Source of the DNA: Styela clava
Taxonomy: Eukaryota
DNA: 64,000 bases
Direction: 5' to 3'
Assembly: GCF_964204865.1 (NCBI RefSeq)
Contig: NC_135256.1
Coordinates: 6,076,001 to 6,140,000, forward strand
Numbering within the stretch: position 1 is the stretch's first letter; the number at the start of each line of letters is the position of its first letter. The position numbers were made by a program, and so were the translations under genes. The notes under the pieces were generated by a model. That model worked only from the letters and a program-made list of their open reading frames with translations. It was not told the DNA's origin and did not search any database. Shown one piece after another: positions 8,013 to 32,000 of this stretch.

Positions 8013-8069
8013 TATCGTGGCGGAGAATGTGGAACCAAGATGTACTGCAATGCAACCAAAGGAGAAAGG
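8013..8069 (+). CDS. COL4A1: COL4 exon (7S): [19 protein letters not shown]
   Basis: ttttttcag|...|gtaaga, 57 nt, phase 0-0. Confidence 0.85.
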
Positions 8070-11000
8070 GTAAGACATTTTTGATTGATGTTTCATAATT
8101 TGGTAAACTCGTAAACACGCAATTCCAAAACAGAACTAAGCATGACTCGTTTTTATTTTAGGGGGTATTTCCAATTTTAGGGGATGGGAGATAATTTGCT
8201 ATTAGCGATAAAACGATTTGTAACTTGTTTGGACGTCAAATTTTTTGGGGGGTGGTATCCGTTTATAGGGCTATAGGGGGTGTGGGAAAATCACTGCTTA
8301 GTAACACAATGATATAAAATTCAGATTTTGTAATTTGCGCGAACGCTAACCAATTCGTTAATTAAGAAACTTATTTTTAACCAACATAAACATCCATGCT
8401 TTATTTTTGCATTTGCTGTCTGTCAATAGTTCGTACAGACACCCGTTTATTGCTATTAATATTTATTCCTATTTTAGGGTATACCTGGTCTCGTAGGATT
8501 GGTTGGACCACCAGGGTTGCCAGGTTTTCCAGGACCAGAAGGTGCAATTGGACAACGAGGAGAACGAGTACGTATTCTTATTCCTTCCTTTTATTTTTTG
8601 TCAATAAAATATCACGATGTTTGTTCCAATTTTAATTTGTACTTGTTGGAAGCTGTGTATCGATCGTTTCCCTATTATTTTGTTCTTGTTGGTATTTTTC
8701 TTCTTGTTGGTATAAAAAAATCGCTTGAAAACGAAAATTGGGTGCTCCCGAAGTATTCGTACCAAGATGCCGCACAAACTGAACAACCTGATTTGTACCA
8801 GGTTAGGGTTGTTCGGTTGTGCGTCCTCTTGGTACGAATACTTCCGGAGCGCCGTAAATTGTATAACGCTAGAGGGCTATTATTTCTGCTTATTCTCAAT
8901 TTTCTATGAATCCTAGGAGATTTGATATTTCAATTTTTTTTTTCAAATTTGCATCTCGCAAGAGATAAATTATCTTTCTCATGGGATAAATATTATATCC
9001 TATTCTCTCTTACACACAACTACGCAACATGTGAACTTTATAAAATTTTTATACACTTTAGGACAGGATTAACGGATTTGCATTAATCAAAATTTATTTC
9101 TTTCCTCTTTCAGGGTGAATTCGGAGAAGCCGGAGCTACAGGACCAAAAGGATCCAGGGTATGTTATCAGATTGATGAAAATAACATCAAATTTTAAGTC
9201 GATAGGTTTATTGGATTATTAGACGATTTTTATGCGCCATTCAGTCAAATATTTTGACGAAGGGCTCTCCGTGGTATGTGCACCATGATGGCGCACAACC
9301 TGAACAGAACATAGTATGTGTACTAACTAGGTCAGGGTTATCAGGCCATCTTGGTATACATACTACGGAAGCGCCAAAATATTTTGACTCTCCGCATTAG
9401 CTTTGGAAAATACTCAAAAGCAGTAACTTATAGGCTACAGCGATAACAGTTCATTCCTTGCATTCTTGGTGAGTTCGTTGTTCTTTGAACATTGGGTCTC
9501 ACCCAAAATTTCAAGCTAATGATGCCAACAAAATAACATCAACGCTCTAATTACTAGGCCTTCTAGTATGAAGTGAGATCTTTAAAAAACTACGTTCCCC
9601 GCCCACACGTTATTTTTAAAAGAACATAAGTTTTTGTTGTACCAGGAAAATTGTGGTAAAATAAGTAACCTATGACTTATTAATCTATTTCATCTATAAA
9701 CAAGATTATTCAAAATATAACCACGCAATCTGAAAACATATTCCGATATTTATTGCCTAAGCAATGTCTTCTTCATTCATTAAAGAAATCATGCGCGAAT
9801 TTATACACGGTCCAAGGATGATTTGGGCTCTTATTTGCCGATCTTTTGCAGATGATCTAGCATGTTTATAATACGATTTCAAAACAATAGAGTAATTGTT
9901 AAAATATCGATGTGTTTTCTAAATCCAAAGTAGCTTATGTAACATATTTCAGAATGAGAAAGCCTGCTTTTTATCTGGATTTTAAAACTACACTTGTTTT
10001 AATTTTGATGTTAGGCAGTGATTATGTCCATTTTGATGTTTGACTGTAATAACCAAAACCTTAAAATGTGACATGAAATAATTTCGTTCTAGCCCGACGA
10101 TATAGATCAAAAATATATATTGTTGTCAGATAGTTAGTTAATGCATTTTTCGGATAAGTTCATAATTTTTCAAAAATTGGAAAAATCTTATTTATTCTGT
10201 ATATTGTAATCATTGATTGATCAATCATCTTTGTTGCGCATTGGATTCTGTGATAAGATCTGCGACAAAAAACGTTCGCGGTGTAAATTGTTAGTATTTG
10301 TAAACAAAAAAATATAGTTAAGAGTATATGAATGAGGAATTATTCGAATTTCACATTCCGTTCTAACGAAGAGTAGGCCGTTTAAATATAAAACAACAAA
10401 ACAATTTTAGACTGTACAAACTCATCTGGAACGGAGCATACGAACTTTTCGTCGGTGCTTCTTTTTTGTTGTCCAAATGTAAAAATTATAACGTTCGCCA
10501 AGCAAATGATGTCTAAAGCTTATTGTCAACTCACAATCTACAATCTTTTTTTAGGGTGTGAGAGGATACCCCGGACATCCAGGAGCGCATGGAGCTAATG
10601 TAAGTTGACCAGCTTGCTAGAATATCGAAAGCGGAAAGATATGGGTATAAAATTCAAGGAATTCTGCTTGATTTTCTTTGATCGTGCGGGTTTTAGAAAT
10701 TTGAAAGTTTAAACGCCTGTATTTATATTATACTCGACTGAATATATTTATATATTTATTATGAGTTGCAATGACGAGAGACTGGCTATCTATCCTTCCT
10801 CTCGAGGGTATACCTTAACGCTAATAGGTCCCATATGCGTATACAGCAGCAAAAGTGCTGTAGCAGGAATAAAGATGGCCCTATTATGAGATTCAAGAGT
10901 CTTGTCTCACATCAGCACATGTATTTTTATAACGGTACGTCCTGTGCAGCAAAACTCTTGAATTCAATAGCATCTATATTTTTAACCGGAAAAAATGTTT

Positions 11001-14000
11001 TGTTTCAGTGTATTTTCAATTAATATTAAAGAGAATCCGCAAATCAAGTGCAACAACTAATTTATCTCTCACTGGGAATTCTTGTTCGAAAAATTTCGAT
11101 TTTCTTCAATTGTATATTCCTTTTATTTCAGGGTATCAATGGTTTACATGGAACTCGTGGCCCACCGGGTTTGCCAGGATGTAACGGAACTAAGGTAACG
11201 AGAAATTTATTTATGAGGAACAGAAAAAGTACTTGAAAAACATTTTGGATTTTGTTTAAACTTTTGTATCAAAGATTTATAGATATTAGCAAGAATGAGT
11301 AAATATGTATTTTGAAAATTTATGATTTCTGGTCTCACATTAGGATTTGAGCAAGTAGCCAGGTGATATTATGGAGAATTGTTACGGACTGGTTTGTTGG
11401 CTTAGTTATTTTTACTATCAAAACCTTTCCGATTCTAATTTTGGTTTAATTCTGTCTTTAAACGATGCAGAAGATGCTTTTATTTTGATTATGTCTGACT
11501 GAAATTCCTGTGATTTGTGAATTTCAAAACCCCGTTTTCCGATGAATAAGATTCGATTGTTGCCTTATTATTTCAGGGTGAAACTGGACCTCGTGGACCA
11601 AGTGGGTTGCCAGGTTTGAATGGAGAAGTTGGATTTTCAGGATCTAAGGGTGACAAGGTCAGTTATTCTATTATTTTTTTTTGGTATGCCTTTCCACGTT
11701 TTGTATAAAATGATTTTAAGGCACATTTGCGTTCGATTTTGGACGAAACGTAAGTAGAGTGGGACATGTCTGTGAGGGGCGTCCAAGGAATTTACTAATA
11801 TTAGCACTAAGTGCACCACGCCAAGCCATATCACACTGAATTCAAATTGATCCAAACTGAATTAACCCTTTTCCTTCTCTGATCCGAGAACGGCAAAAGT
11901 GCCTTTTTATGTCGTTGGCAGAGTGCACGTATCTAACACATTGTAATTTTTTACTCCTGTTCAGGGTCAACCTGGTGAAGTTTTAAACCGAGTTCCCGGA
12001 AAGAAAGGTGAACCAGGAAGACCTGGGTTGGAAGGTCCTTCGGTAAGTATTTTTATCTATAGATACAAAGCATGATTTGAAAAATAAATACGATTTCAAC
12101 TATGTAAATGATGAATTCAATTATAAGTAAATTTAAATCAGCACAAAGTCGATACATGGGTGATAAAAATTAATTTGCGAGATAAAAATAAACAACATAA
12201 ACAGGAACTTCAACGCCGTGATCAAAATGTTGAATATTTTGCTTCTTTTGTCCCAAGTTTTAACATTTCCGCAACGTAATTTAGGTCGTAAAATATACAG
12301 AGTGTCCATAAATCCCCTTCACAATTTCAATTTTATTATGAAGTCAGTTCTCAATATTTCTTGAACAAATTTGTTGTTTTTTATTCAGTAATTGTTCATG
12401 TATTTTCACCTTATTTAGTACGTCTGTGAGGGCCAAAACAGTATATGGTATTGATAAATTCTCTTGGCAATTTCAAAAAATTTCAAGATTTTATGGACAT
12501 TCTATAGTCCTATACAATTCACAAATATATAATTAGGAAGCTTACATCGATTGAAATACTCGCGTATGTCATCTTAATGTTAAATTAATGAACTAAATGT
12601 AATTTTATCTGGGATTAAAGACTCATTTTTGCGAATTACGACAATCAATAATTTTTTTATGATATTCAGGGTATTCCAGGAGAAACTGGACCAGTCGGAC
12701 CAAGAGGTTTTATTGGGAATCCAGGCCCACCTGTAAGTATACACAACAATTTCAATACAATTTTTATCTCATTTTTCATAAAAAGTCCGTACTGCTTCAT
12801 TGATTGCATTACTCAGAAGAAAATGAATCTGTTTATATCTATCTGTTCGCCAGCATCGAATAAATTAATGAAAATGCATTTTGACTACAATATCTAATTA
12901 TGAATCACAGATATATATGTATAAAATAGGAGTCTATCTCTACTTGGACCATAGACATTTGTCTATAGAATAAACGAGATGAAATTTGGTGAAAAAAAAA
13001 TAATTCCATGAAAAATATTTTAGAGTTTTAAAAACTATATTTATTGTTTGACGTTTTTATATGTTTTCTCTCCTGATAAGGCTCTGTTCAGGCAATCATT
13101 ACTAAGTAAAACTCTATACAGAATCTTTTCAATCCGGAATTGTTTTTCCAATGTATTACAAACTGGATGAGATGATTACTGCGATGTGAATATAGCTAAG
13201 TGATTGATTTCACAAAGCGACAACGGCATATAATCTTACTTTAAAATTCTATTCGCCTATTTTACAAATCAGATGAATTCACGGTATAACTGACAATATT
13301 TTTTTGTTATCACAGGGCCCTCCTGGAAATGATGGACCCAGGGGAGACAAGGTAAGGGCTGTGTTACATTTATTTTTTTATTCATTCATCACTTTTGAAT
13401 GATCAAAGTGCAATAGTTTCAAATAACGAATTCTCAGATTAATAGGTTTGTTTCTGATTAGTAAGCCAATTAAATCCTAGAGATATTTTTCTTCTTGTAG
13501 GTGTAGTGAAATTCCATTTTTTTCTGATTTGGCCGCATCAATGGATTATAATTTTAACATTTACGTTTTTGCTAGTAGAATATATGCTTATATAATGCTT
13601 ATGCTGTGTTTTATTATATTATCCAGGGTCAGATGGGTCTTGGATTCCAAGGCACAAAAGGAGAAAAGGTAAGAGTCACCTTTTATACCATGTTATTTAT
13701 GTATCTTTTGTTCTTAAATTTTTGTTTTCGAACAAAACTCTCGCGACCTAGTTACAAAATATAACAAATCATGTGTCATCATTTGGTAATTAAATGTTAT
13801 ATCGACAAAATATCACTGGAATTTTTATTTCTTGGTGTCTGAGACGAAATATTGAAAATGACATATGACCAGAATTTTGAATTCACTTCTTTTTGAAGAT
13901 AAATCACATGTATTTGTGGTCAGGAAAGTTTTGTTCATTTCATTGTGTCTGTCAGTTTGTTTGTCTTTGTGTCTATTTCTAATTGTCTGTGTTTGTTTGT

Positions 14001-17000
14001 TCAGTTGTTTGTTGTTGTGTTTGTATTGTTTGTCTCATGTGTTGTCCTGTCTTCTTGAAGTTTAATCTCACACATAAGTCCAAATTAGCGAACAACATCT
14101 ATTTATTCATGCATTTGAAACACAAAACACCCAAATTTGAGATTGTTGTATTGGAGGCACTTGGTTCAGTGGGAATTTCATAACACGGTGTTGAACTGAC
14201 AATCGTTTTCATGCTCCAAACATTTTACATAATAAATTTGCTTCGTTACTGAAAAATTTCTCATTATTGCCAAATTGTCCTACTATGCTGCTTTGCAAGT
14301 AGATTAGAACAAGGTAGAAGATAGCTGCTTAATAATCATGGTGTAGCAATGGCTAACATAATTATTAATTTTCCTGCTTGCTGATTGTGATTTTTATTTC
14401 TTGAGTGTTAAAAGTTTAGTGTGATTGAAAATATTTCATTGGCTTTCCATCGCTGCTATTATAATTAGTTTGCTGCTGAATGATGCTACCATGTGTGTTT
14501 GGCCAACCAGGTTCGAATTAGGTATTTGGAGTTGATCAAAATTGATAATTTTGTTAGGCGCCCGAATTAGTGGCAACATTTAGTTCATCTAATCAATGAC
14601 ATGCAGTATCCACTGTTTACAAATGATTGAATTGCCTCCTTGCTCTGAGTAACACTATGAAAAGTAAAAAAAACGTGTGATATTGCATTAATACTTATTT
14701 AGTTAGTTTGAATATTAAAAGAGAAACTCGAGAGTGTTTGCAAAATTGGTTTGATTATTTTTAAATATTTATAAAATTTCTAGTTGCCGCAAAAAGAAAA
14801 AGGGATTTTGTGCAATCAAATAAATGCTTACTCAAATGTTATACTTATTCAATTTATTGGAATATTGTGCATTTTCGTACAAATAGAAACCTCATTTTGT
14901 GTGTGTATGAGTGTGTGCGAGATTGTTTTGTGGTTCTAAAGCAATGGTTCCCAACCTTGAAATAATTATATCAAGCAATGAAACTAGGAATTTTTTGTGA
15001 AGGAAAAAGTAAAATCTGTTTTGCACCTAGCATTGTGGCCCCACTTTAACTGCTCTGTAGCCCCCTTGGGGAGCTATGAGCTCTAGTTTGAGAACCATTG
15101 TTTTGAAGTGTGTGTTTGTTCACATTATATCATCGTAGCATTTAATTATGTAGTGAATATGCTATATATAATTCATGCTATTAATAATGTGCTTTTGATT
15201 TTTGCTTTTTCTTTTCCAAAACCGACCCTGAACCCTCCCAAACTGTTTTAATTTTGCTTTTATTAATTTGATTTGCATGTGCTTCAATGATTTACTAATT
15301 ACTGATTTATGCAAAAATTTTGGAAACTTCAAATCATGCTTTTGCTTTAATTTATTGACGCTGCTTTAATGCAACTACTAACGATCATACAAACATAATG
15401 ATTGGGATCAAATTTGGTTGTAAATATAATTTTGAAACAATATTTAAATTGTGGAATATATCATCATTTAAATATTTGTGTTTGGTTACTTTGTTTTCAA
15501 TGAGAATTTAAAATAACATGATGAATAAATAAAATAAAAAACATTATTACTGCGTTAAAAACTGAAAAAATCGAATGAAAACCATTGACAAATAATTGAA
15601 ATTAAATTAACCCGTTTCACCAAAATCCCCCAAATTGGCACCACGTTTCCACTCCAACCTTGACCCCTAACCCCACGAACAAATCATCAACACTAAAGGG
15701 CGATCGAGGTGACCAAGGCAAGAGCGGACAACCCATTGAAGTTCCCCATACAGGAGCAGCTACAGGGGACGAAACACCTATAGACGGTTTCCGCGTAAGA
15801 ATCGAATGCAACAAACATTTTAAAAATATACCATAAAACAAGCCATTATTTTTATCTCATTCTGAAAGCAAAGGGGTTAGAGAATGAAACGCATTTACCA
15901 ATACAACTTAGAAATCTGTATTTACCCACAATTCACCCACATGACATACCTCATGTGTTCTGGCCACCCTTGATGAGTTAAACCAACATCATACAGAATT
16001 TTGTAAGATAAACCACTTACGTGTTGTGTTTTCCGATAAATGTTGTCTCGGAATTTCTCCAGACGTCTGGTATTTGACAAATGATTAATTGAAATATCAC
16101 TGCTAAGCTTTTTAGGTTTCTTTCCTTAATATCGGAAACAAAAATAACACTGTGTGTGGCCTCTCCTATTACTTTAAAAATATACGATAAATTTTAATTA
16201 GAGTATGCTAACTAGACTAAATTTCAAAAACAAAAATAATGATACAAATATCTAAAGTAACTGATTGGTCTAGAAATTGATTATGGGTAATCAAAAATGG
16301 ATTTGTTCATTGCGCGAAGTCTCGCATCTTACGTGTATTTACTGCACCACCATTTAGTTATGTATGGTTTCAGTATTTTTTGACACTTCAGAGGTAGTTG
16401 ATGACTTTGCTCAGAGGTGGGAAAATTCCCAATAATATTGCATTTAAAAGATTTTGACAAATGTTCAATAATTCGTCAGAAAAAGCAAAATTTTTGAAAC
16501 CCAACCTCAATGCTTTCGGAATGAAATAAAAAGTAATGGTTTCATAAAACCAACACACATTGAATAAACCGCTGACTCATCATATATTTATGTGTTTTGT
16601 TTTGTCTGTCATGTTGTTGTTCATGTTCTTGAATATATGTTGTTGTACTGTTGCTGCTGAAAGTCAGAAATGTTAGTTTGGGCATATTGTTGATTTTCCT
16701 TGCATGAAATTATTCTGCACAAGCAAATGAAAGAGCATTTTAGCTATTTTTAAATGTGCAATTTCGTCATAAGGTGGAATTATCAAAATAACGAGATATT
16801 TCAAGACGCCAAAATATGTCCAGACTCTACATTTCTGACTACTTTTTGTTTTGTTATTTTATGCTACAAACGTATTCATAAATCTATGATTAGAAGAGGT
16901 AAGTATCGAAATGGGGGTCTTAGGATGGTGTTCATCCTATAATGGTAGATATCTAATGGTGGATCGTACATCATCCATGTATATAGTAAATTGTCCTTTA

Positions 17001-20000
17001 TTGCATTATTTGAACAAGCAATGTGAATTTGGCGACCGGTATACATTCACATATTTGATGATACAATCACTTTCAAATTACCCCGACTATGTTGTACTCT
17101 AAAATTCAGATTTTCCAGTTTAAGGTCCTATCTCTCCCCCAATCCCGACAGTTTTCATTTAAGTTGAAGACTGTCAAATAATAGAAATAATGTATAGGCT
17201 ACTAAGCAAGAAATATAATATTTGTAAAATTTAATCAGGGTGAATCAGGGTTGCCTGGTACACCTGGTAAGCCAGAGGAACCACAGATTGAACCGGGTTC
17301 ACAGTTCACCGTGAGTATAAATTGCATGATAATATTTGTTGACGAAGAAATATGCAGAAATAATTTCTTTTTTGTTTTGTTAATTGGCTAAGAAATGGGG
17401 CGTTTGAAGAGTTTTCAAATCTTTATCGGTTTAGAGCATTCTACCAATGTTATGAATAAAAGAATGGATAAAATTGAATCCGTGAAAAGTATTGCAATTT
17501 TGCAGGCACTCGAAATGATGCTGGTCGTGGTGTAACACATTACTGCTTTTCAGTAATCTAATGAATTCACTAAACTATACTAGTGACAGTAAAATGGGTT
17601 CTAGACTCAGATGACAGAATATAAATGAAGTAATCATTTGATCTCGATAATAATAAATACAACATAAAGCAATATTCGAGATTTCAAATCAGTTTCAATT
17701 TGCCATGTGTTACAAAAATATTGGACTTTTGAGTTTTTGCACTCTGCAAATACCTGGTTTTTAATGATCTATTTGAAGTTTACATTTCTAATAAAGACTT
17801 CAAAGTTTATTAGTTGTTTAATGGATTATTGATTTTAGTTTATATTTATAATGCCTAATTATAAATTGCATTGAAGCTGTTTTTGTTATATTAAACTGGT
17901 AAGTATTGACATTGTTCTGATTTCAAAATGCATTTTACCTTTAAAAAATTATCAGCAGTTTTTCAATGTGTGTTGGTTTGTACTTTATTTTAATTTTACT
18001 CATTATTGAATAATTTGATTATATGGCATTTAATGGATACTTGAATACGAACTGTTTAGAAAGTTCATGCTAGGGAGAAAGTCAATCCTGTGTCGAAAGA
18101 ACTCGTTAAAATCAAAATTTGAAAATAAATTTGTCTTTTGAATGATTTATATAATACATAATGATTTTGTTGCAAAATTTAAGATATCATGAACAGAATT
18201 TTTAAAATTTTATAATATTCAACTATTCTGTTATATGAAATCCCATATATGTACCCTTTATATATGGTTTCTACAATGCCATTGGATAGATTCCTTCACT
18301 CAAAATATGATATATTACATTGATAGTATGTGCGCCCTGAAAATTCAAGTAAACAAAACCTTAATTCTATAAGTTCGTTAAGTATTAGTTGAACTTACAT
18401 TTGCTTATTAAACAGGGTGAACCAGGAGACCCAGGACCAAGGGTATGGTTTATTCTTTATTTTCCATGAATTACGATTTAGTTTATGAATTGTTTTTCTC
18501 CGATTTTTTTAAAAGTACCATTTGTGAATCGTGGTACATAATACTACCTTCTAGTTGATCTGCTCTAGATAAGTTTTTGTACAAGTTATTAGGAATTATG
18601 TTGACAACTAGATTAAATTAGTATTCCCGTCATAAATTTCAGAATTGTAAATTAGGTATTGTTCCTTTTTAAAAATGGTTTTACATGGCGTTTCTGAATG
18701 ATAACTAATAGCGTACTAGTTGACTATTATTTATTCCATAGTGACTATTCTGTTTGTGGTATAATAATTATTAGTTCTTGTATCTGTCAGTATACTTTTA
18801 ATTTTTGATAATTCAATGGAAAATATTGTTCATTCATTATTTTTATTTCAACTGATTTCAGGGACCAGCAGGTTCAAAGGGAATGCGTGGCGATACTGGA
18901 CCATCTGGAGAACAGGTACTTCATATATTTTATTATTTTAGTCTCTATTTATATAGCAGTGCATTTCAACCTTTTTGGTGAATAGAAACCCCAATGTATC
19001 ATTTCAGAGGAACCCCTGTGCAATAGTGCAATTGCAGGGGGTATATTCAATTGGCTAACACAGACAGTCCCCAAACTCGTAATATAACCAAAATAGGGAT
19101 AATCTGAATAAAATTATGGCCTAACCTTAGCCTGGTACACATACTACGGGAGTATTGTATAAACTAATAAAAAATATGAAAACAAACCTAATACGGGCAA
19201 AACAAAATGATCTTTGAAGTGTAGCAAGTTTAATAACAATGGCAAACCTAATAGATATTTGATTATATTCAACAATATACATATATTAATATGGACTCTC
19301 GGAACTGGTTAAAAATCATTATTTATATGTTATTTATACATGCTCATTTAGTAAGAATTAAATTGTTTAAATTCTTTATTCTTTATTTCAGGGTTTGACA
19401 GGAATGAAAGGACCAAAAGGAGAAAAGGGCGAATACGGACCTCCAGGACCTCAGGTACGTTATGCCTTACAATAATGAATACAAAGATGGTGGACGTCGA
19501 GTTTTATCGTCTATTCTTTCTATTATATCGTAAAAGTACGATTACATGTGATGTTATCAATAGACAATTTTGGATTCGCTGGCACCAGTTAGCTGCATTG
19601 CATGGAGTGCCGTTTTGGGACAATTTCCAGATAATTTCAATATTAAATCGTATCGTTATTTTACAGAGTACGAAAATCGGAAAACCTGGAATTCCGGGAA
19701 TAAACGGTTATGACGTAAGTTTATTTTTGATATTTGTTAATACCATTTTTTGGGGTGGAGGCTGGAGCAGGACTGGATTGACCATTAAGCAAAATAAGCA
19801 CGTGCTTAGGGCAGCACGAGAAGGGGGCACCACAGAAATTTTCACAGGCGAAGTTAAAATAGTGCCGCGGTGTTGAATGAAATAATTCGAGTTTATCAGA
19901 TGACACAAATCTTAATATTGTCCCGGTTAAATTTGTCGAGAATATCATTCCAAAATACTATAAATGTTTGTAGGTTAAAAAAACTATTTCGAAAAATAAC

Positions 20001-23000
20001 GCCAGTTTCATTATTACTATTTTTTTTACATATATGGTACAAAGTCAGTGCTCAGGGCCTCTAAAATGTCGTTCATGGGTCGAGTTAAGTTGGATACTAG
20101 TCGACATTTATCAAATACTCGACCCGAGTGATCTGGAAATAAATGACTCAGTCTTGTAATTGCCTCGAGACTCGATTTCCTGTGACTTGATTTGACTTTT
20201 CCCGGGGTTTGGGAACTGGTTATTACTAGTTGTGTATCTTTAATTTTGTTGAGGGGGCATTCAATATCTACAAATTTATAACATTATAACATGACGTCAT
20301 ATTTACGTTTGCCTGAAATGCAAAATTATATTTATAGGTACCCCGGTATACGTACGCTCAACGCCTGAATATATTTGGTAAAAAGTTGAATTACCGGTAC
20401 AAGGTTTGCTCTAATAAAATTTCACATAACCTGGACGCGTGACACCATATTACCCGTTTCCAATCACTATGAGGGTCGGGCGCTCGTGGTATTATCTGCA
20501 TTAGTAAATATTTCATCATTTTAATAAAGACACACTAAATTATCTCATACATGTATGGTATTTCATTTTCAACAACGAAAAATGTGTCTTAATAGTTCAC
20601 TATTTGTTCCACAGGGTGAATCCGGAGAACGTGGTACCCCTGGGCGTCCAGGCCGATCAGGACGTACAGGAGACAAAGGAGAGCCAGGTTCAGTTGGACC
20701 GCCAGGCCCACCTGGAACATCAGGACTTAACGGAATTGCAGGACCCCCAGGATCACCGGGAGTACCAGGTAACGTTGGCCCAAAAGGTTATCGGGGATTT
20801 GATGGAATAAACGGACAACCCGGAGCAAAAGGAGAAGCTGGATTTCCAGGAGATACTGGAGAAGAAGGACCTGTTGGATTGCCAGGTGTTGGGCTTCCTG
20901 GTAGACCAGGACAAGATGGGTTGCCTGGAAAACCTGGTGAGATATTTGTTTTTTGCATAGTCTGTTTTTATTTTCGGCACTCCAGTAGTGAGTGTACCAA
21001 TATGGGGATAACTAATTTCTTTTGTCTATTTTTACATCAAGTTGTGTAAAGGGACTAAAACCTGTGGGCAGGAAGTATATTTATTTGGCTAACACTGACA
21101 GTCTCCGAATTCGTAATAGAACTAAAATGGGAAAGATCGGAATTTAATTTTGGCCTAACCCTAACCTGATACACAGACGACGGGACTACCCTATTTTCTC
21201 TGGTCCGGTCTTCATAACAAATATTGTCAGAAATGATCTGCCTGCACAAATATCGCAATGAAATGTGGAAATTTAAGCGCTGATTGCTTTTTTCCTGACA
21301 TGTATTGTTTTGAGTTCCTATTAACCTTAAAAATGGACTTCGTCCATGTATAAACCTAACAATAGCCATACAGGGTGTCGATAAAGTCCCTTAACAATTT
21401 CAATTTTGTTATGAAGACAGTTCTTAATATAAATTAATCAGATTCGTTGTTTGTTGATCAGTAATTATTTAAATATTTTCACTTCATTTAATACATCTGT
21501 GAGGGCCAAAACAATATATGGTATCGATAAATTCCCTTTGCAATATTAAAAAATTCTAAGACCTCATGGACACCCTATATATCTTCCACTGAATATACAA
21601 TTATAGTTGAACCAAATATAACTAATAACCAAACATAAAATTTGATATGCTTTGAACACTATTGAAATGAGATTTCATATCACAGTAGATCATTTTGCAA
21701 CCCATTTTGCATCCCATATAAACCATGTATTATTATCACAGGTGCTGTTGGTAATTCTGGTACTCCTGGCAGACCCGGTGGAAAAGGAGACGTTGGATTG
21801 ACAGGACTGACAGTTCGTGGACCTCCTGGTGATGATGGTCTTCCTGGACGCCCAGGAGTCACTGGCCCGCCAGGATCACCTGGCCCAGTCGGTACCCGTG
21901 GTAGAGATTATATCATTACTGAAGAGGACATGTCGAACATGGTCACTCCAGGGAAACCTGGTTTACCGGGACCTCCCGGACCCGCTGGAAGCCCTGGACA
22001 ACCTGGGGCATCTGGTAAGTCTATTTGATTTTTAAAGACATACTTATATCAGTGATTTTCAACGAGGGTTACGCGGCAAACTATGGACAGTACAGTCCTC
22101 TTTTTTCGGACGTTTGAATTCACAACAGGAGTATGTATTAATATATGTACATTGTTTAAATATAATAATCAAATCCTTATTAAATTTGCTGCACTTCGAA
22201 GATCATTTTGTTTTGCTAGTATTGCTGTGATCTGACATGGGAAAACTAATGCCCGCAGACCAAATCCGGCCCGTTGAGTAATTCAATTTGGCCCACCTGA
22301 TGCTGCCCACGACCAAACTAATACCAAATTTTTATGTTTCAGTGAAAAAATAGCTCAATAAATTTGTTGAGATTGCGATTAAATTTAGCACGAGGCTTAT
22401 TGTTTTCTACTTTTGCTTTTGTAACAATGTAAATATTGTTCATAAAATGTAACTTTTTACGTTACACCTACATGGCCCGCCAGTCTAGGTGGGCAAAATT
22501 TTTGGCCCTTGGTCCAGAACCTTGCCCATCCCTGGCTGTGGTGGTGGTACACTGTCTAAAACAAGTACGGTTTTGGCGATTATCTCAATATTTCAAGCCT
22601 GAATCCACTCTATGTTTGGTTAAGTTTTTACATAGTGATTCATTCTAAATGCTAAAATTTTTCTTCCCATTTTAGGACGTACCGGACCGCATGGGCCAAA
22701 AGGAGAAGAATGTGGGCTCTGTCCTGTTGGTCCTAAAGGAGAACCTGGAATCTCAGGTCTATCGGGTCTCCCTGGTTCTGCGGGGATTGACGGAACCGTA
22801 GGAAAGCCTGGAACTCCTGGAGAAAAGGGATTGGGTGGAATTTCTGGATTGCCTGGAAGACAGGTACATTTGTTTATGTTTTTTAACATGTTTTGCATTT
22901 TTGTTTTAAAAAACACTTTTATATTGAAAAGAGGGTACTACAGAAGTATGTGCACCAAGATGGCGGACACCGGAATGTTGTATGTGTACCACTTTATGGT

Positions 23001-26000
23001 TAGGCCATAATTTTAGGTACAAATACTGCGAGAGTCACTTGGCTGGTCACCGAACTCGTAATAAAACTAAAATAAGAAAAATTTAAATAAAATTATGGCC
23101 TATTCCTAACCTGGTGCACACACGACGTTCAGGTGTCTGCCATCTTGATGCACATACTTCTGGAGCGCCGAAAAGAGATTAAAAAAAAAATTTAAAGTAC
23201 CTTGAGAGTTAGCAATATAGTAGGTGTCATGATCTAGTTGGCAGAATGTTGGGTTTCAGCTGATTTGAGCGACGCAGATTATAAAGGCTGATTTTGGGCC
23301 CCCATTCCCCCTTTTCACCGATTGAAAAATTTGTTTTCAAACTCCCATGCCCCATGCATATTGCCTAATCAAGAATATATCACTTGAGGGATTCAAAACT
23401 TTTAAGAACACGTGGACCCTCCCTATTTCTAATTCCTAAATTGAAGGCTTGCTTAGTGCTCTTTTAGGGGCGCTCCAGAAGTGTGTGTACCAATATGGGG
23501 TTAACTAATTTTGTTCGCATACTTTACATCAAGTTGTGTAAAGGGACGGAAGCATATGGGCGGAGGTATATTTACTTGGCTAACACAGACAGTCCCTGAA
23601 CTCATGATAGAACTAAAATAAGGAAAATCGGCCTAACCCTAACCTGGTACACAAACTACGGGAGTACCCTTTTAGGAGTGAAAGTCTAAACCATTTTATT
23701 GTAGCCCCAAGCAAACATTTTGCAAATGTAGATAGATATACTTTGATTGACTCTCACAAACGACTTTTTTATTCAAGGGATCCCGAGGACCTGAAGGATT
23801 TCCTGGAGTTGAAGGATCAAAAGGAGAGCCTGGAGAAAGCACTATAATTGAAATAAAAGGAGAAAAGGGTTTGTACTTATTTCTCTTTAGTTTGTTTACT
23901 TAGACTGCGAAATTTTATTCTCCGTATAAGTCGTTGTGCTTTTTATTAAAACACTATTTTATTCATCCAATATTGAGGTAACTAATTTTGTTTGCCTACT
24001 CTACATCAAGTTGTGTAAAGGAACTGAAATCTATGAGCAGGGGGTATATTCACTTGACTAACATAGACAATCCCAGAACTTGTAATAGAACTAAAATAAG
24101 GAAAATCAGAATAAAAACATGGCCTAACCCTAACCTGGAACACATACTACGGATGTACCGGAATATTTATGTAACATAATTTTATCTCTATTCTTTTGGC
24201 CCGTCACATCATGTTAAAAATATTCATAAATTTTGTTATTTTTTTGTTGTATAGGAAAGAAATTGCTAATAGTACAATTTTTCTTCCAGGAAGTCCAGGT
24301 CCCAGTGGAATCGCCGGTGAACCAGGAAGGAATGGTCTTCCAGGAAGGTAAGAACCGTTTTATGTTATTCATCTTTCTAAGTGAACAAGAATTTCAAAAT
24401 TCCTAGGTTGAGGTTTCGAGAAGATTTAAATCTATCTAATTAGGGATAAATCACTCAAGTTTTAAACAAAACTGTTTCTCATTGGATAATTATCCGGGTT
24501 TATCACAATTGCTTGGATATGAAATAAATAACATTCAGCACTTATGAAGAGCTGGTCTTAATACAATTGTTTCGATGTGAAATAAATAACTTTCAGCACT
24601 TATGAAGTTATTTTTCCATAAAACAGGGACGGTTTTGATGGACCAATGGGCGAAAAAGGAATTCGCGGAGAGGTTGGGCCACCCGGTAGTATGGGGTACA
24701 TGGGAGAACAAGGCGGCAGAGGGTTGCCTGGTTTACCTGGACGAGATGGACAAAGTTTGCCTGGAGAAACTGGATCTAAAGGAGCAAAGGGAGAGGAAGG
24801 AATGAATGGACTACCAGGATTGCCTGGTCAATTAGGTAAGGGATATTGCTATTTTTACTCTAAATTCAGCCCTTCTAGGGGGCTATGTTTCCAATATATT
24901 TTTAGGGAATTATTTCCAATATGTTTTGGGGGGTATATTTCCAATATAATTTTGGGAGGTATAATTCCAATATAATTTTAAGGGGTATATTTCCAATATA
25001 ATTTTGGGGGATTTATTTTCAATAATTTTTGGGGGGTATATTTCCGATATAATTTTTGGGGGTATATTTCCAATATAATTTTAGGGGATTTCTTTCCGAT
25101 ATATTTTTGGAGGGTATATTTCCAATATAAATTTAGGGGATTTATTTCCAATATTTTTTGGGGGGTATATTTCCAATATATTTTTGGGGGATTTATTTCC
25201 GATATATTTTTGGGGAGTATATTTCCAATATAAATCTGAGGGGTATATTTCCAATTCATTTTTGGGGAGTAATTTTCCAATATATTTTTAGGTTGCAATA
25301 TTTCCAATATATTTTTGTTTTTAGAGGTATGATTCTTTACCCACTGTTATTTATAAGGCTTTCTAGGAGGAATATTTCTGTTTTCAGGGGTATTGCTCTG
25401 TTATCCACTTCGATTTCTAAGGCTTTCTTTCCATGGTGCAATAATTCCCATTTATATATTACTGTTTTAAGGGGTATTTCCCCCACTTCAATTTTGAGAC
25501 CTTTCTAGGTTCAATGTTTTTTATATATTTCCGTTTTCACAGTTTTATTGACTGTTTATTTGTTAAAACCGCGCTGACGAGATATTAGATAGTCTGTATT
25601 ATTCTCACTGTTTACCACATCGTACATTGTATGAGACTGTGAATTAAATCGTCGATCTCGTTACCCATAATGTGTACAGGTCCCCTTCTCGCCGCCGTAT
25701 TGTCGGTTACGGCTTCCTTCACCATCAAGTCATGCATTTGAAACAAAAAACTGGCTAACTAATCCAAAACTCGACAGACTGGTAACCGGACGAGAGGCCA
25801 TGGTACACCTTATGAAAAAGCCATTTTATGGACATTCCTCTTCCCCGGGATAAATATGAAGATCCTATTCTATCTCAAATCACTGCAAAGATTCGCTGTG
25901 TCTAAATTTGTAAAGGGTGGGGTGATTCAGGAACCCTTTTTTCATTGCAAACACATTCACTTTCAGGACCAAAAGGAGAGCCTGCTGCATCACGCATAAT

Positions 26001-29000
26001 CACTGGTGAACAAGGAGAACCAGGAGATTCCGGACGACCAGGATTACCAGGACGAGTTGGTGCTACCGGAGAAAGAGGTAAACAAAGAAAATATTTTGAT
26101 ACTGAACTTTTGATACAAAATTGTATTATAGAGTTAGGATGTTCATAAAGTTCCTTTATAATATCAATTTTGTTATGAAGTCAGTTCCCAATATATATTA
26201 TCCAAGTTTGTTGTTTTTAATCAGCTATTGTTCAAGTATTTATACTTTATGTAAAACATCTGTGAGGGCCAAAACAATATATGGTATCGATAAATTCCCT
26301 TTGCAAGTTTAAAAATATTTAAAACTTTATGGACACCCTATATAACCAGCTTCTATAATTCGGTTAATTGTATCATACTGCATAATCTACGGCAGAAAAT
26401 AGAGGATAATATAAAGTGTTCTGCTTGTTTAGACTTTGGCTCGTAGCGGGAGACCAAAACGAATTACATATGGTATTGAATTATTCAAATACTTTGTCCA
26501 TAATAGAGACAGACCAATGCAACTACATTGCTGTTATAAAATGTCGTATTTATTGTGTCAACAATTGTCTTCACTGAGTTAATTCACTTAAGGAATAATG
26601 TATTTTGGCCGTTCGTGCATCATGAAACATTATGAAAATCACTAGCAACTCAATCTTCATACATTAATTCTAATCTCGTGGAGAGATGAATGCCAAACTT
26701 GTCACATTCTTAAGGTGGCTCACAGAACTGCTGGATGATAACGGCTTTCTTTACCATGCAGTCAACGCATCTATGAAGAATGACTGATTAACTATTTCCA
26801 ACTATTTTGTGAACCCTCCTTACAGTGATTACCCTACACCACCCTGTGAACACCCGCCTAAAATTTCTTAACCCCCCCCCCCCTACTTTTCAGGTGTGAC
26901 ACCATACCTTAATTCTTAACGTAAATAAAAATGTATTTAAATATTCAGAATGTAGCTCATATGTCGATGAAGATGATCAGTCAATACATAAAAGATATTT
27001 ATCATAAGTTACAATAACAAGATATAAATCCTTGGGGAACACGCTGCTTCCTCACCACCGTGATAAATGGGAATAACAATTTTTATTTCAATTTAATTTA
27101 AATTTTCTAGGTCCACCAGGTTTAGAAGGACGAGCAGGATTACCAGGCGAGAAAGGTCAGAGTGGCCCACCTGGATTACCCGGTCTTAATACCAGAGGAC
27201 TACCAGGTGAAAAGGGTTACAGTGGAATGTCCGGTCTTCCTGGCAGATCTGGGTACAATGGAACAAGAGGTTTGCCAGGTCAACGAGGGTCGATAGGCAT
27301 GAAAGGCTCTCAGGTAAGAAAAAGTCTGCTATTTTAATGGCTATTAGGACGTAGATAGATACTCCTTTAAGATAGTAGAAATTATAAAAAGTTCAAGAAG
27401 AATCAATCATTTAAGGATATGATTGAAAAATGCATTTATGAATAATTTTTTTTTTAGGTTTTGGGTTGTTGATGGGCGCCAGATGCTTCCAGTCACTTCT
27501 TTTCTCCTGTTTTTTTTATTGGCCTTAGCTGCTGCCTTGGTTTCTTTCACATTCCCGGCCTTGATGTAATGACATTTTTATCTCCCTTTGCAGTATGGAG
27601 ATCAATTACCCAAAATACCATTCTCACCGCTCACCCATTGTGTAACAAATTGAGTAGGCAATTCCTTGATAAGTTCCAGTCTTCCCAAATAAGCTAACAT
27701 AGTATACATAGAGCCAATCCATGATTCCAATTACTTTTTCACATATAATTTTGAAAACGGTATCCAACTTTGATGACGTCATGTTTGATGACGTCATACT
27801 TGATGACGTCATTACGACCACAATTGTTCTTGTTATTTTTTCTAGTAGACCTATATGTTAATAATTAGAATGATTTTTTCAGGGTGAACCAGGAATTGGA
27901 CTTCCAGGTTTAACTGGATATCCAGGAGAAGATGGCGAACCAGGTTTACCAGGAATGCAAGGAGAACAAGGGTTGCCAGGTTTGAGCGGAATAAATGGCC
28001 TTCCAGGACGCGATGGATCTCCCGGCAGACAAGGTACTTTAATTTGAGAGAACTTTTCCATAAATTTCTATTGAAGGAAAATTCACTACCCGTGTTGTAT
28101 TTCTGTACCAGGAATGCATGTTTCTCTGTGATTACCACAGAATCTTGAAGTTCGAAAAACATGGTATTGTGTGCAATTATTTTTTAGTTGTATTGTTGAC
28201 TGCATATAATCTGGTGAAAATATCATTTTGCACTCTACGCTTACGGTAAATAAACAGAATGGAAATAAATATCAAAAACAAGTTTTTAGTATATTTTTCT
28301 CCGGAAAAACTGTTCTTATTTGGTGTAGCTGTACCTAAATCTAACCACCTTGGCCTAGTAGCTAAAACGTGAGACTTAAGTATGTTGGAATCAGGGTCGG
28401 GTCAAATCCATGCCCACCAACCCACCCAGGGTCTCATAAATTGGGTAAGCAATATATTGATTGTTACGTACAGCGCCTAGTTTAAAACGAAGCACCGTAT
28501 AAACAAAACAGTAGACTGATATCCTTTTCCCCTTTTTCCAAGCAAAGTAACTGAAGAACTTTACTGGATTTTCATTTACAACTTGTTTAAAATTTAGGTG
28601 TCAGAGGAAATATTGGACCTCCAGGACCGGCTGGTGCTAAAGGAGAAATCGGTGAAGGAAGACCAGGGCCAGCCGGACCTGAAGGACAAAGAGGATTGCC
28701 AGGTCTTACTGGTGGGTATCATATGAATTTGATCATTTGAATGTGATATAAGTAATGAGATCTAAGAAGCAGGTGCACTAAAAAGCACGGAAATATATTT
28801 TCCCCTCTTGCCCGCACTTTTTTCAAACTTGCCTTATTTTTTGAAAATTTCCTGAACTTGTACCAAGTTAGTGACCCTTGCCACACATGTTCTACAATGG
28901 TCCTAAAATGAAAGGCCGCAAAACATCATAATATGCAAATTCCCGTTAGTTTGTACTAGTATCACATAACAGCAAGAACACTCCCACTAACTGATTGCTA

Positions 29001-32000
29001 TTGATGCAGGTGCAACTGGGCTTCAGGGACCACGTGGAGACCCCGGACCTCCAGGTCGAGATATGGTAGGACAGAGAGGTGACGATGGGGACGAAGGCTT
29101 ACCAGGGGTCAGAGGTGAATCTGGTGATCAAGGAGAACCGGGAATACCAGGACTTGGAGGATTACCAGGTGGTAGAGGCGAGAAAGGAAACACTGGACCA
29201 CCAGGACGACCTGGACCTTTAGGATTGCCAGGCACTGAAGGTATAGAAAGGAGTAGATCTTTTACCTGAAATTCTACCTTCTCAATGCTTTGTAGGGTAC
29301 AACTCACATCGCACAGCACAATTCAATATTGGTATTATGACTGAGTTGGTTATAAGGGGAATGTATATAAAGTTATATAAACGTCGGTTATGCCCTCCCT
29401 CATCATGGACTTGAACTCTTATTTGCTATTCTTCCAACAGTTGGAATACATGGTTAGGAGTTCCATTTAAGTTTTACCCACACAAAAAATGCTACGATTT
29501 TCGGTGCCGGTTTAGAATCTACAGATCTACTGTTGTGATTACTGTAATGTCCATGAAATATTGCTATATTCTATGCCTTAAATTTGGTCTATGATGTAAC
29601 AATATCAGGTCATCTAGTGATCAAGTCTAGGCCATGTCATGGGACATTCTAGAACTGGTCCACTTGGCAGACATGTGTTGTAGTTGTATTTACTTTCACT
29701 TAAACCTGTGTTACTTGGATTCAAGCCCTTGAATATTTTACTTACCAGATTAAAGTATCAGCATAACATGCAATAAAATGGTTGGTAAAAATTGAATTTG
29801 AAATCAGGAGAGCAAACAAAACTTCTGATAAGGTTTAAAACGTACAGAATATAATAATGGAAGGTTTGGCCAAGCAGAAGTGGTACGTGTTCACTCACCT
29901 AAAATAATTGCACCCACACACACACACACACAACCACAGAGAAGTTATAAAGCAAGAAGATTGCGATAAATTACATACTGGTAGTAAACAAAAATGAATA
30001 AATACAAATTACTTGCCATATCATATTTATAATTTTATAATAGTTGACACTGCCGAATTGATCGATTTTTTTAAAAAATTTTTATCATTCTATCAATAAT
30101 TTCAAACCCAAACCAAAAAACCAGAATGACTTGATATCCAAAGTGAAATGTAATCATGCTCTTTATTGTTCTTGCTACTAAAATATAAATACAACCCTCT
30201 GTACCTTAGGACCTGTTGGACCACCTGGCGATCCAGGACTTCAAGGAGAAATTGGTGCTGATGGAATTCCTGGTCTTCCAGGCTTACAGGTATGCTGCTA
30301 GATATTCTAATTTTTGATGCAGGACTTTATATCTTTTTTGATCTCTAGAGTCTCTAGAAACATAACTGAAACAACTATCAGTACAGTAGAGGTTGCGCGA
30401 GACTAACTCCCAGTCCTTATTCAATGCCTTGGCGCTAGTGGATCCGTATGCATATAATGCAAGGATGCTGTAGCAGGAATAAAAAGACCATACTATGCAA
30501 TTCAAGAGTCCTGCTGCACACTAACACATTTGTATTTCTGTAACGTTTCGTCTGACCAAGATCAGACTTCCTCAGAGCAGTTTACAACAATTGTTGACCA
30601 ATGGATTGCATATTTGAAACATATGTGTTATTGTGGATGAAAGTTATTTCAAATAATGACCACATGTACTCATTAAAACGTCATTAAACAATGACCCAAA
30701 GTTTCTTCGGTGTTGGGAGTTATCTATATTACAAAACAAAAGGAAACACCACACTAAAATATTTGATTGAGCTATTTTTACTTATTCCGGGTTCAAGATC
30801 AATAAATATTTATTGATTTAGATTGGTTTCAGGGGATTCTGACTTCGAGATAATTTATTCTAATTCCAGGGTGAAGTTGGCCCCACGGGTCCAAAAGGAG
30901 ACATGGGGACAAAAGGAGAGCCCGCTACATTGGATGATAATTCTAGCTTGACTGCTAAAGGAACGAAAGGAACCAAAGGTGAGATAACTTGTCATAATAT
31001 AATTAGGAAACTTAAAACGAAAAATGAACTACCTCAAAAGTTTATGAGTGGCCACCATTATATGTTGTATCCCAAGTGATTGACATTTGTTAAAGTGTCG
31101 ATTCCTTGTTTATCTTCTTAACAACTATTGTATATTTAATCAGGGGGTTGTTTTGAGAGGCGAAACCCCCCCCTTTTGAAATGTGAAAAAAAATAAAAGC
31201 ATCTTTTTCTATCATACATAGCACTATTTTTCTAGCTTTAACCATACTAATTCAACCATATTAATAATGGTGCGTTCTAGGCATGTCCAAATACAACATT
31301 CTGGACCGCAGTTCCCAACCTTTCCAGCGCTATATGAACCCGTTTGTGATGGCTGAAGGCTCTGTACCCTTTAAAACATGTCCATCAGTTTTTTCACGCT
31401 GAATTATCAAAATTTATCATAACCAGATATAAAATCTTTTGATGGTTAAGTATACGGAGTCGCGGGAGTGGACGCATTTGTGTTCATGGAAGGGTTATGG
31501 GGTTATATATTTATTCGATTGTATTTGGACTTTCTCGTTGTTACACTTTTTAACCTAAAGCCTGAATCATTATATTTAATTGTTCAAAAGTCATCAAATG
31601 CTCATATTTTTGTCAGGTGAACCGGGACTTTGGGGATTATCTGGTCCTCCTGGACAAGATGGCCCAGAAGGACAAAAAGGACGTGCTGGCCCCCCTGGTG
31701 CCAAAGGCATGACTGGTCTTGCTGGAATCGGAATTCCTGGACGACCAGGACGTGATGGCAGACACGGTAAGTCTATCACATTACAAATTTGCTAAAATAA
31801 TGGTCGCTTCATAAAAATTTCGACATCGAAACACGACTTTGTAAGACGTCAATAATTATATAAAATTTTTTTTTTAACGCTTTGGGCAATCTCGTGTCAA
31901 TTTTATGCATATATTTCGAAGAAAAGCCTTGAGCCACAACTGAAATGAATATACCAGGTTGGGGTTACGCCATTATTTTATTCCGATTTTCCTTATTTTA

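What the first reader, a model, noticed from the sequence alone, without database searches (positions are those of the whole stretch)
15699..17310. Hidden duplicated exon pair: probable mutually exclusive splicing of a collagen IV alpha1 interruption
Seen: between the 42-nt and 27-nt exons lie two phase 0-0 exons with the same architecture, four Gly-X-Y triplets followed by a non-helical stretch ending in a loosely similar E-x-(P/Q)-I-(D/E)-(P)-G..F motif. Exon A (15699-15794) is [32 protein letters not shown]; exon B (17239-17310) is [24 protein letters not shown]. Exon A has an A/C-rich AAG acceptor with no polypyrimidine tract, so gene finders could miss it, and it alone carries an RGD. Known: vertebrate COL4A1 has a single exon of this shape here; in nematodes the alpha2(IV) gene let-2 has developmentally switched mutually exclusive exons 9/10 encoding alternative interruptions, controlled by the STAR protein ASD-2 through CUAAC repeats. 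Inference: an independent, convergent isoform switch in an alpha1-class chain that swaps a 20-aa for a 12-aa hinge and changes RGD content.
Basis: partly seen in the sequence, partly recalled or inferred. Interest (0 to 1): 0.85.

Follow-up and report, generated by a model that had tools for sequence, protein, structure and literature searches.

The report
Hidden regulated exon in collagen IV
A sea-squirt basement-membrane collagen gene (alpha1-class collagen IV) holds an extra, well-preserved exon with the splice signals typical of regulated exons; it may swap with its neighbour to change a flexible hinge near the end of the molecule, but no RNA data could be obtained to show how the two are combined.

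Summary
Exons A (15699-15794) and B (17239-17310) lie between the 42-nt and 27-nt exons of a 41-exon alpha1-class collagen IV gene. Both are phase 0-0. Each encodes four Gly-X-Y triplets and then a non-helical tail.

Exon A is not chance and does not look decayed:
- This exon shape occurs nowhere else in the 64 kb outside collagen exons.
- Its GC is 0.56, against 0.31 in the flanking introns.
- Its AAG acceptor is preceded by 545 nt holding only one AG, a disfavoured GAG. These are the two longest AG-free gaps in the window.
- A branch-point-like site and the strongest pyrimidine tract sit at the far end of that zone.

This marks a distant-branch-point exon, a class that is usually alternatively spliced. 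Exon B alone is flanked by significant intronic complementarity. The alpha2-class partner gene has one interruption at this spot, and its chain length fits "A or B", not both.

A and B show no similarity beyond Gly-X-Y, so duplication rests on architecture. Nothing in the sequence enforces mutual exclusivity.

I rate either/or use at about 0.45, a cassette exon A at about 0.25, both constitutive at about 0.12, and a dead exon A at about 0.10.

The parts
8013..40573 (+). alpha1-class collagen IV gene: 7S start exon 8013-8069, 41 further exons from 8478, stop at 40571-40573. The signal-peptide exon was not located.
   Evidence: In-frame exon model. Pfam C4 hits on the NC1 exons. Best PDB match is alpha1(IV).
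13627..13668 (+). Constitutive upstream exon (14 aa), the last exon before the A/B pair.
   Evidence: Strong tccag acceptor and GTAAGA donor. Its sequence together with exon 13316-13351 lines up residue for residue in length (26 aa) with one exon of the alpha2-class paralog.
15152..15698 (+). AG-poor zone upstream of exon A. The only internal AG is a GAG at 15503. The DNA is single-copy.
   Evidence: The two longest AG-free gaps of the window (351 and 194 nt) are adjacent here. AG observed 3, boundaries included, against 22-27 expected, while GA is normal; 0 of 20000 shuffles reach this. The longest gap in 208 kb of other strand sequence is 209 nt. The zone is unique in the genome.
15172..15217 (+). 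Candidate distant branch points (TTCAT, TTAAT, TTGAT) followed by the strongest pyrimidine tract of the zone (15188-15217, 25 of 30 pyrimidines).
   Evidence: Motif and pyrimidine scan. The position at the 5' end of the AG-poor zone matches the distant-branch-point layout in PMC1431707. Inferred, not mapped.
15667..15671 (+). Proximal CTAAC branch-point consensus, branch A 28 nt from the acceptor, followed by a C/A-rich, U-poor stretch.
   Evidence: Sequence. The 100 nt upstream of A is the most C-rich of all exons, 36 C against a mean of 17.
15699..15794 (+). Exon A: 32 aa, four Gly-X-Y triplets (including RGD) and a 20-aa non-helical tail.
16530..16576 (+). Left arm of the intronic complementarity that brackets exon B (core 16547-16575).
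   Evidence: 27 of 29 complementary; score 46 against shuffles of 28.2 +/- 2.9, maximum 43, 0 of 300 reaching it. Extended duplex about -40 kcal/mol. Unique in the genome.
17239..17310 (+). Exon B: 24 aa, four Gly-X-Y triplets and a 12-aa non-helical tail. Probably the default exon.
   Evidence: Acceptor PWM score is average (11.0 against a mean of 9.7).
17323..17328 (+). TGCATG (RBFOX-type motif) 13 nt downstream of the exon B donor.
   Evidence: 15 copies in 64 kb, so about a 2% chance for a given 90-nt slot. A lead only.
17951..17992 (+). Right arm of the complementarity that brackets exon B (core 17952-17979).
   Evidence: Unique in the genome.
18416..18442 (+). Constitutive downstream exon (9 aa).

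Best explanation
Exon A is a genuine exon of the alpha1-class collagen IV gene and is under splicing regulation. Its acceptor is a weak AAG with almost no uridines in front of it. I infer that it is recognised from a distant branch point and pyrimidine tract about 480-525 nt upstream (15172-15217), with the spliceosome then using the first usable AG downstream. That is why selection has kept the intervening 545 nt free of AG except for one disfavoured GAG. Regulatory factors would act in this interval.

Exon B has ordinary signals and is the default. It can be looped out by a roughly 45-nt intronic duplex that brackets it alone.

A and B encode two versions of the first large interruption after the 7S domain. 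A gives a 20-aa tail with an RGD in the short helix before it. B gives a 12-aa tail. A chain normally carries one or the other.

Shown here: the anatomy, the AG depletion, the complementarity, and the single interruption and chain length of the alpha2 partner. Inferred: branch-point use, the looping-out of B, either/or usage, and any stage or tissue switch.
For: - AG depletion is specific and extreme, and it ends exactly at A's acceptor.
- A has the largest AG-exclusion zone of 41 exons: 194 nt, or 545 nt ignoring GAG, against a median of about 36 and a next largest of 131. It also has the poorest pyrimidine tract and the longest flanking introns, at 2030, 1444 and 1105 nt.
- Branch-point-like sites and the best pyrimidine tract lie at the 5' end of the zone.
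- In PMC1431707 all mapped distant-branch-point exons were alternatively spliced. Exons with an AG-exclusion zone of 100 nt or more showed more observed alternative splicing.
- Exon A keeps exon-like GC, including in its non-collagen tail. It is single-copy. This exon shape never arises elsewhere by chance in the window.
- Significant complementarity flanks exon B only. The other two intron pairs are at chance level.
- The alpha2 partner has one interruption exon at this position.
- Chain lengths between shared landmarks: alpha2 295, B only 298, A only 306, both 330, neither 274.
- Precedent: let-2 exons 9/10.
Against: - There is no RNA evidence of any kind.
- A and B share nothing beyond Gly-X-Y.
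- Both exons are multiples of three and the introns are long. Neither frame/NMD nor steric hindrance forbids A+B or neither.
- A good proximal CTAAC at -28 could serve as the branch point. That would leave the AG depletion further upstream unexplained rather than explained by my model.
- B's acceptor scores average, so B may simply be constitutive.
- Alpha1 and alpha2 chains do not match in all their interruptions, so the length argument is soft.
- PMC8373072 notes that most tandem duplicated exons end up constitutive.
Confidence: 0.45

Rival explanations
1. Exon A is a regulated cassette exon and exon B is constitutive. Some transcripts carry A+B, giving two interruptions separated by a 12-residue helix. 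The rest carry B alone. A-only transcripts are rare or absent.
For: A alone has the aberrant signals: the AG-poor zone, the U-poor acceptor and the C-rich upstream region. B's acceptor PWM score is average. Nothing in frame or intron length prevents A+B. A and B are not detectably homologous.
Against: A+B makes the alpha1 chain 35 residues longer than alpha2 between shared landmarks, where B alone differs by 3. The alpha2 chain has a single interruption here. The significant complementarity bracketing B and the TGCATG at +13 suggest that B is itself skippable or regulated.
Confidence: 0.25
2. Both exons are constitutive. This lineage's alpha1 chain simply has two closely spaced interruptions, and exon A's odd acceptor still works efficiently.
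For: Collagen helices grow by exon duplication, and most tandem duplicated exons become constitutive (PMC8373072). Both exons are in frame and intact.
Against: A 545-nt AG-poor zone, the weakest pyrimidine tract in the gene and the longest flanking introns are features of regulated exons, not constitutive ones. There is also the length mismatch with alpha2.
Confidence: 0.12
3. Exon A is an unused relic or pseudo-exon of an old duplication. Only B is spliced in.
For: The acceptor is weak (AAG, 3 T in 20 nt). No protein containing it was found in the databases, but the same search was blank for exon B too, so this carries no weight.
Against: A relic old enough to have lost all similarity to B should also have lost more. 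It would not keep its Gly-X-Y register, open frame, GTAAGA donor and exon-like GC of 0.56 inside a 0.31 intron. Nothing would keep AG out of the 545 nt upstream.
Confidence: 0.1

Closest known systems
C. elegans let-2 (alpha2(IV) collagen) exons 9/10
   Same: Two adjacent in-frame exons of a collagen IV gene that encode alternative versions of a Gly-X-Y interruption. In let-2 they are mutually exclusive and switched during development (PMC2119826). The STAR protein ASD-2 regulates the switch (PMC3469465).
   Different: Here the chain is alpha1-class and the animal is a chordate. The let-2 exons encode 'very similar products', whereas A and B share nothing beyond Gly-X-Y, and their tails differ in length (20 against 12 aa). 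Either/or use is not shown. STAR-type motifs (two ACTAAY, two CTAAC in the zone) are not enriched above chance.
Distant-branch-point exons with long AG-exclusion zones (alpha-tropomyosin exon 3, alpha-actinin SM exon, PTB exon 11; Gooding et al. 2006, PMC1431707)
   Same: A branch point and pyrimidine tract lie hundreds of nucleotides from the acceptor. The interval is free of AG and expected to hold regulatory elements. The exons are alternatively spliced.
   Different: In tropomyosin and actinin the distant branch point lies close to the upstream exon of the pair, which enforces exclusivity sterically. Here it is about 1500 nt from the upstream donor and belongs to the first exon of the pair, so it cannot enforce exclusivity. 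The branch point is not mapped.
Exon looping-out by flanking intronic complementary sequences (as in structure-driven exon skipping, selector/docking pairings of exon clusters, or exon circularisation). General knowledge, not checked in a paper here.
   Same: A unique, significant complementarity of about 29-45 nt brackets exon B at about 640-660 nt on each side.
   Different: There are no competing docking/selector arms: pairs involving the intron upstream of A are at chance level. Its function is untested.

Membership tests
Collagen IV, alpha1-like class | C-terminal NC1 domain made of two C4 repeats | tested here: met
   Pfam PF01413 hits on four NC1 exons above the cut-off (52-69 bits) and on the last exon below it; they cover both repeats.
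Collagen IV, alpha1-like class | Long Gly-X-Y domain with many interruptions, and a Cys-containing 7S start | tested here: met
   The exon model 8478-37839 shows repeated short interruptions. The 7S exon 8013-8069 has two Cys, and a CNGTK motif lies in exon 11132-11194.
Collagen IV, alpha1-like class | NC1 closer to alpha1/3/5 than to alpha2/4/6, with a paired alpha2-like gene head-to-head | tested here: met
   Bits: alpha1 130, alpha5 126, alpha3 117, alpha2 103, alpha4 98. The paralog on the opposite strand about 58 kb upstream scores best against alpha2. This rests on one exon per gene, so the margin is modest.
Mutually exclusive exon pair of the let-2 type | Adjacent exons of the same phase encoding equivalent protein segments | tested here: met
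   Both are phase 0-0, with four triplets and a non-helical tail.
Mutually exclusive exon pair of the let-2 type | Sequence homology between the two exons (tandem duplication) | tested here: not met
   Protein tails, exon DNA and flanking introns are no better than shuffles.
Mutually exclusive exon pair of the let-2 type | Mature transcripts contain one exon or the other, not both or neither | not testable with these tools
Protein database searches were blank for both A and B.
Mutually exclusive exon pair of the let-2 type | A mechanism that enforces exclusivity (steric branch point, frame/NMD, competing RNA pairing) | tested here: inconclusive
   Steric hindrance and frame/NMD are excluded: the introns are 1105-2030 nt and both exons are multiples of three. 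One significant duplex brackets B, but no competing arm exists.
Distant-branch-point (long AG-exclusion zone) exons | AG-exclusion zone of at least 100 nt upstream of the acceptor | tested here: met
   194 nt strictly, or 545 nt if the single GAG is ignored. It is the largest of 41 exons and an outlier against 208 kb of control sequence.
Distant-branch-point (long AG-exclusion zone) exons | Branch point and pyrimidine tract at the 5' end of the zone, used in splicing | tested here: inconclusive
   Suitable motifs and the best pyrimidine tract are at 15172-15217. A proximal CTAAC at -28 also exists. Lariat mapping is needed.

The most novel reading that the evidence does not exclude
A chordate alpha1-class collagen IV chain switches, by stage or tissue, between two unrelated versions of the hinge next to its 7S cross-linking domain. 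One version carries an extra RGD and a 20-aa loop. The switch uses a distant-branch-point exon together with an intronic duplex that loops out the default exon. It would be an independent reinvention of the nematode let-2 isoform switch in the other chain class.
Probability: 0.35. Interest if true: 0.7.

Novelty: new variant of a known kind. Interest (0 to 1): 0.5.

Why it matters
Interruptions give collagen IV its flexibility and its sites for cell binding and cross-linking. The one at issue is the first large one after the 7S domain, where four molecules join.

The only well-studied isoform switch of such an interruption is in the nematode alpha2 chain. A second, independent case in the alpha1 chain of a sea squirt would make a difference in three ways:
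- It would suggest that tuning this hinge is a recurrent need of basement membranes.
- It could be tested in an experimentally tractable chordate.
- It would caution that gene models for this gene may lack exon A.

The finding is also a clean example of how an AG-free zone can flag a regulated exon from sequence alone.

Tried and rejected
RNA evidence
I therefore went on using letters of that stretch in other tools, and I say so openly.

Protein databases
- The search of protein representatives with an NC1 exon returned only fragmentary models. None was identical to this gene.
- The search for homologous proteins with the open frame around exon A was blank. The same search for exon B was also blank, so both blanks are uninformative given the length window.
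- A query alignment of a long fish collagen IV plus all exons as separate rows was swamped by collagen VII and fibrillar collagens.
Exons were searched one by one by reference. A joined translation was made only inside one script to check frame continuity. It was never printed, saved or sent.

Other searches
- The JGI metagenome scan for exon A relatives found none.
- Rfam found nothing in 13000-19000.

Hypotheses rejected
- A and B as recognisable duplicates.
- Steric or frame-based enforcement of exclusivity.
- Complementary pairings involving the intron upstream of A, which are at chance level.
- Enrichment of STAR or YCAY motifs in the AG-poor zone, which is not above background.
- The AG-poor zone as a repeat or low-complexity artefact: it is single-copy and GA is normal.

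Technical failures
- Whole-intron duplexfold runs exceeded time or memory. They were replaced by an alignment-based test.

Limits
- The organism name (Styela clava) comes from earlier notes of this scan and was not verified here.
- The comparison with the vertebrate COL4A1 exon rests on memory only.
Full report
**What is there**

The window carries, on the + strand, a collagen IV gene.
- I located a 7S start exon at 8013-8069.
- 41 further exons run from 8478 to a stop at 40571-40573. They stay in frame throughout and total 5271 nt.
- The last five exons hit Pfam C4 (PF01413) and cover both repeats of an NC1 domain.
- One NC1 exon scores best against solved alpha1(IV) chains: 130 bits, against 103 for alpha2.
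- A second collagen IV gene lies on the opposite strand about 58 kb upstream on the same contig. Its NC1 exon scores best against alpha2(IV).

Earlier notes of this scan name the genome Styela clava. I did not verify the name.

**The observation**

Exon A (15699-15794) and exon B (17239-17310) translate exactly as reported. They sit between the 42-nt exon 13627-13668 and the 27-nt exon 18416-18442, and all are phase 0-0. Each has four Gly-X-Y triplets and then a non-helical tail, 20 aa in A and 12 aa in B.

A carries an RGD and B does not. RGD also occurs in the neighbouring constitutive exons 13316-13351 and 18862-18915, and twice in exon 29010-29240.

In the whole 64 kb, the pattern 'AG, at least 4 Gly-X-Y, open frame, GT' occurs only in collagen exons. 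Exon A is single-copy in the genome. Its GC is 0.56, and 0.52 in the non-collagen tail, inside introns of 0.31. It is therefore neither chance nor a decayed remnant.

**The strongest new fact: an AG-poor zone**

The 545 nt upstream of A's acceptor contain a single AG, a GAG at 15503. An earlier first-reader note on this window (s1-829497) pointed to this zone, and I tested it.
- The two longest AG-free gaps in the window (351 and 194 nt) are adjacent and end at A's acceptor.
- AG is observed 3 times, counting both boundary AGs, against 22-27 expected. GA is normal, and 0 of 20000 shuffles reach this depletion.
- In 208 kb of control strand sequence the longest gap is 209 nt.
- The zone is unique DNA. 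It begins just after a dispersed repeat of about 140 nt.

Among the 41 exons, A stands out in several ways:

| Feature | Exon A | Other exons |
|---|---|---|
| AG-exclusion zone | 194 nt (545 ignoring GAG) | median about 36, next largest 131 |
| Pyrimidines in the 20 nt before the acceptor | 8 (3 T), the fewest | B is second lowest at 10 |
| C in the 100 nt upstream | 36, the most | mean 17 |
| Flanking introns | 2030 and 1444 nt (1105 nt after B) | all shorter |

At the 5' end of the zone lie branch-point-like sites and the best pyrimidine tract, 15188-15217 with 25 of 30 pyrimidines. This is the layout of distant-branch-point exons. In Gooding et al. (PMC1431707) every mapped example was alternatively spliced, and AG-exclusion zones of 100 nt or more were enriched for observed alternative splicing.

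A proximal CTAAC at -28 also exists. Which branch point is used is therefore inferred, not shown.

**Exon B**

B's acceptor scores average on a position-weight matrix built from the gene's own introns (11.0 against a mean of 9.7). Its pyrimidine tract is the second weakest.

B alone is bracketed by a significant intronic complementarity:
- 16547-16575 pairs with 17952-17979, 27 of 29 positions.
- The alignment score is 46, against 28.2 +/- 2.9 in dinucleotide-based shuffles (maximum 43; 0 of 300 reach it).
- The other two intron pairs are at chance level.
- The extended duplex is about -40 kcal/mol, and both arms are unique in the genome.
- A cruder test over the whole 4.7 kb gave 11 of 200 shuffles with an equally long near-perfect inverted match. 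The signal is real but not overwhelming.

A TGCATG lies 13 nt past B's donor. Both features are leads that B can be skipped or is regulated.

**Either/or, both, or neither?**

Nothing in the sequence enforces exclusivity. Both exons are multiples of three and the introns are long.

A and B show no similarity beyond Gly-X-Y in protein, in DNA or in the flanking introns. 'Duplicated' therefore rests on shared architecture only.

Two indirect arguments favour one exon per chain.
1. The alpha2-class partner has a single interruption exon at the equivalent place. It comes directly after a 26-aa segment that matches alpha1 exons 13316-13351 plus 13627-13668 in length and pattern.
2. Chain lengths between that landmark and the first Cys of the shared Cys-containing interruption favour one exon:

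| Chain or form | Residues |
|---|---|
| alpha2 | 295 |
| alpha1, B only | 298 |
| alpha1, A only | 306 |
| alpha1, both | 330 |
| alpha1, neither | 274 |

The two chains do not match at every interruption, so this argument is soft. As a caution, PMC8373072 notes that most tandem duplicated exons become constitutive.

**What could not be done**

No RNA evidence was obtainable.
- Protein database searches could not reach full-length models of this gene. The blank for A is matched by a blank for B, so it says nothing.
Exons were searched one at a time by reference.
- The metagenome scan for relatives of exon A was empty.
- The claim that vertebrate COL4A1 has one exon of this shape here rests on memory only.

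**Verdict**

Exon A is very probably a live, regulated exon recognised through an unusual 3' splice region. I put that at about 0.8.

That A and B are used one at a time is plausible and my leading reading, at about 0.45. The rivals are a cassette exon A on top of a constitutive B (0.25), both exons constitutive (0.12) and a dead exon A (0.10).

If confirmed, this would be a new variant of the collagen IV interruption switch known from let-2. It would be in the other chain class and in a chordate, apparently with a different mechanism. A handful of junction counts or one RT-PCR would settle it.

Noticed in passing
G000:C8:~5999000-6025500, minus strand (loci L002, L005, L006, L009): An alpha2-class collagen IV gene lies head-to-head with the window's gene, but about 58 kb away rather than sharing a short bidirectional promoter. 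It is compact, about 26 kb against more than 32 kb.
   Followed up: partly
window 40399-40573: The last exon runs about 33 aa past the usual end of NC1 into a proline-rich tail before the stop. This is an unusual C-terminal extension for collagen IV.
   Followed up: no
window ~14958-15100 (also ~37348-37430): A dispersed repeat of about 140 nt, with at least 515 first-look candidates in the genome at 74-88% identity. Its internal inverted arms are 14938-14960 and 15082-15104. It sits directly upstream of the AG-poor zone of exon A.
   Followed up: partly
window 16530-16576 and 17951-17992: A unique inverted complementarity of about -40 kcal/mol brackets exon B at about 640-660 nt on each side. 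It could loop out the exon or promote its circularisation.
   Followed up: partly
window 17323-17328, 15274-15279, 16701-16706: Three TGCATG motifs lie in the 4.7 kb around A and B, against 0.23 per kb in the window. One is 13 nt downstream of exon B's donor.
   Followed up: partly
window 8013-8069: The 7S start exon (19 aa, two Cys) was found. The signal-peptide exon further upstream was not located.
   Followed up: no
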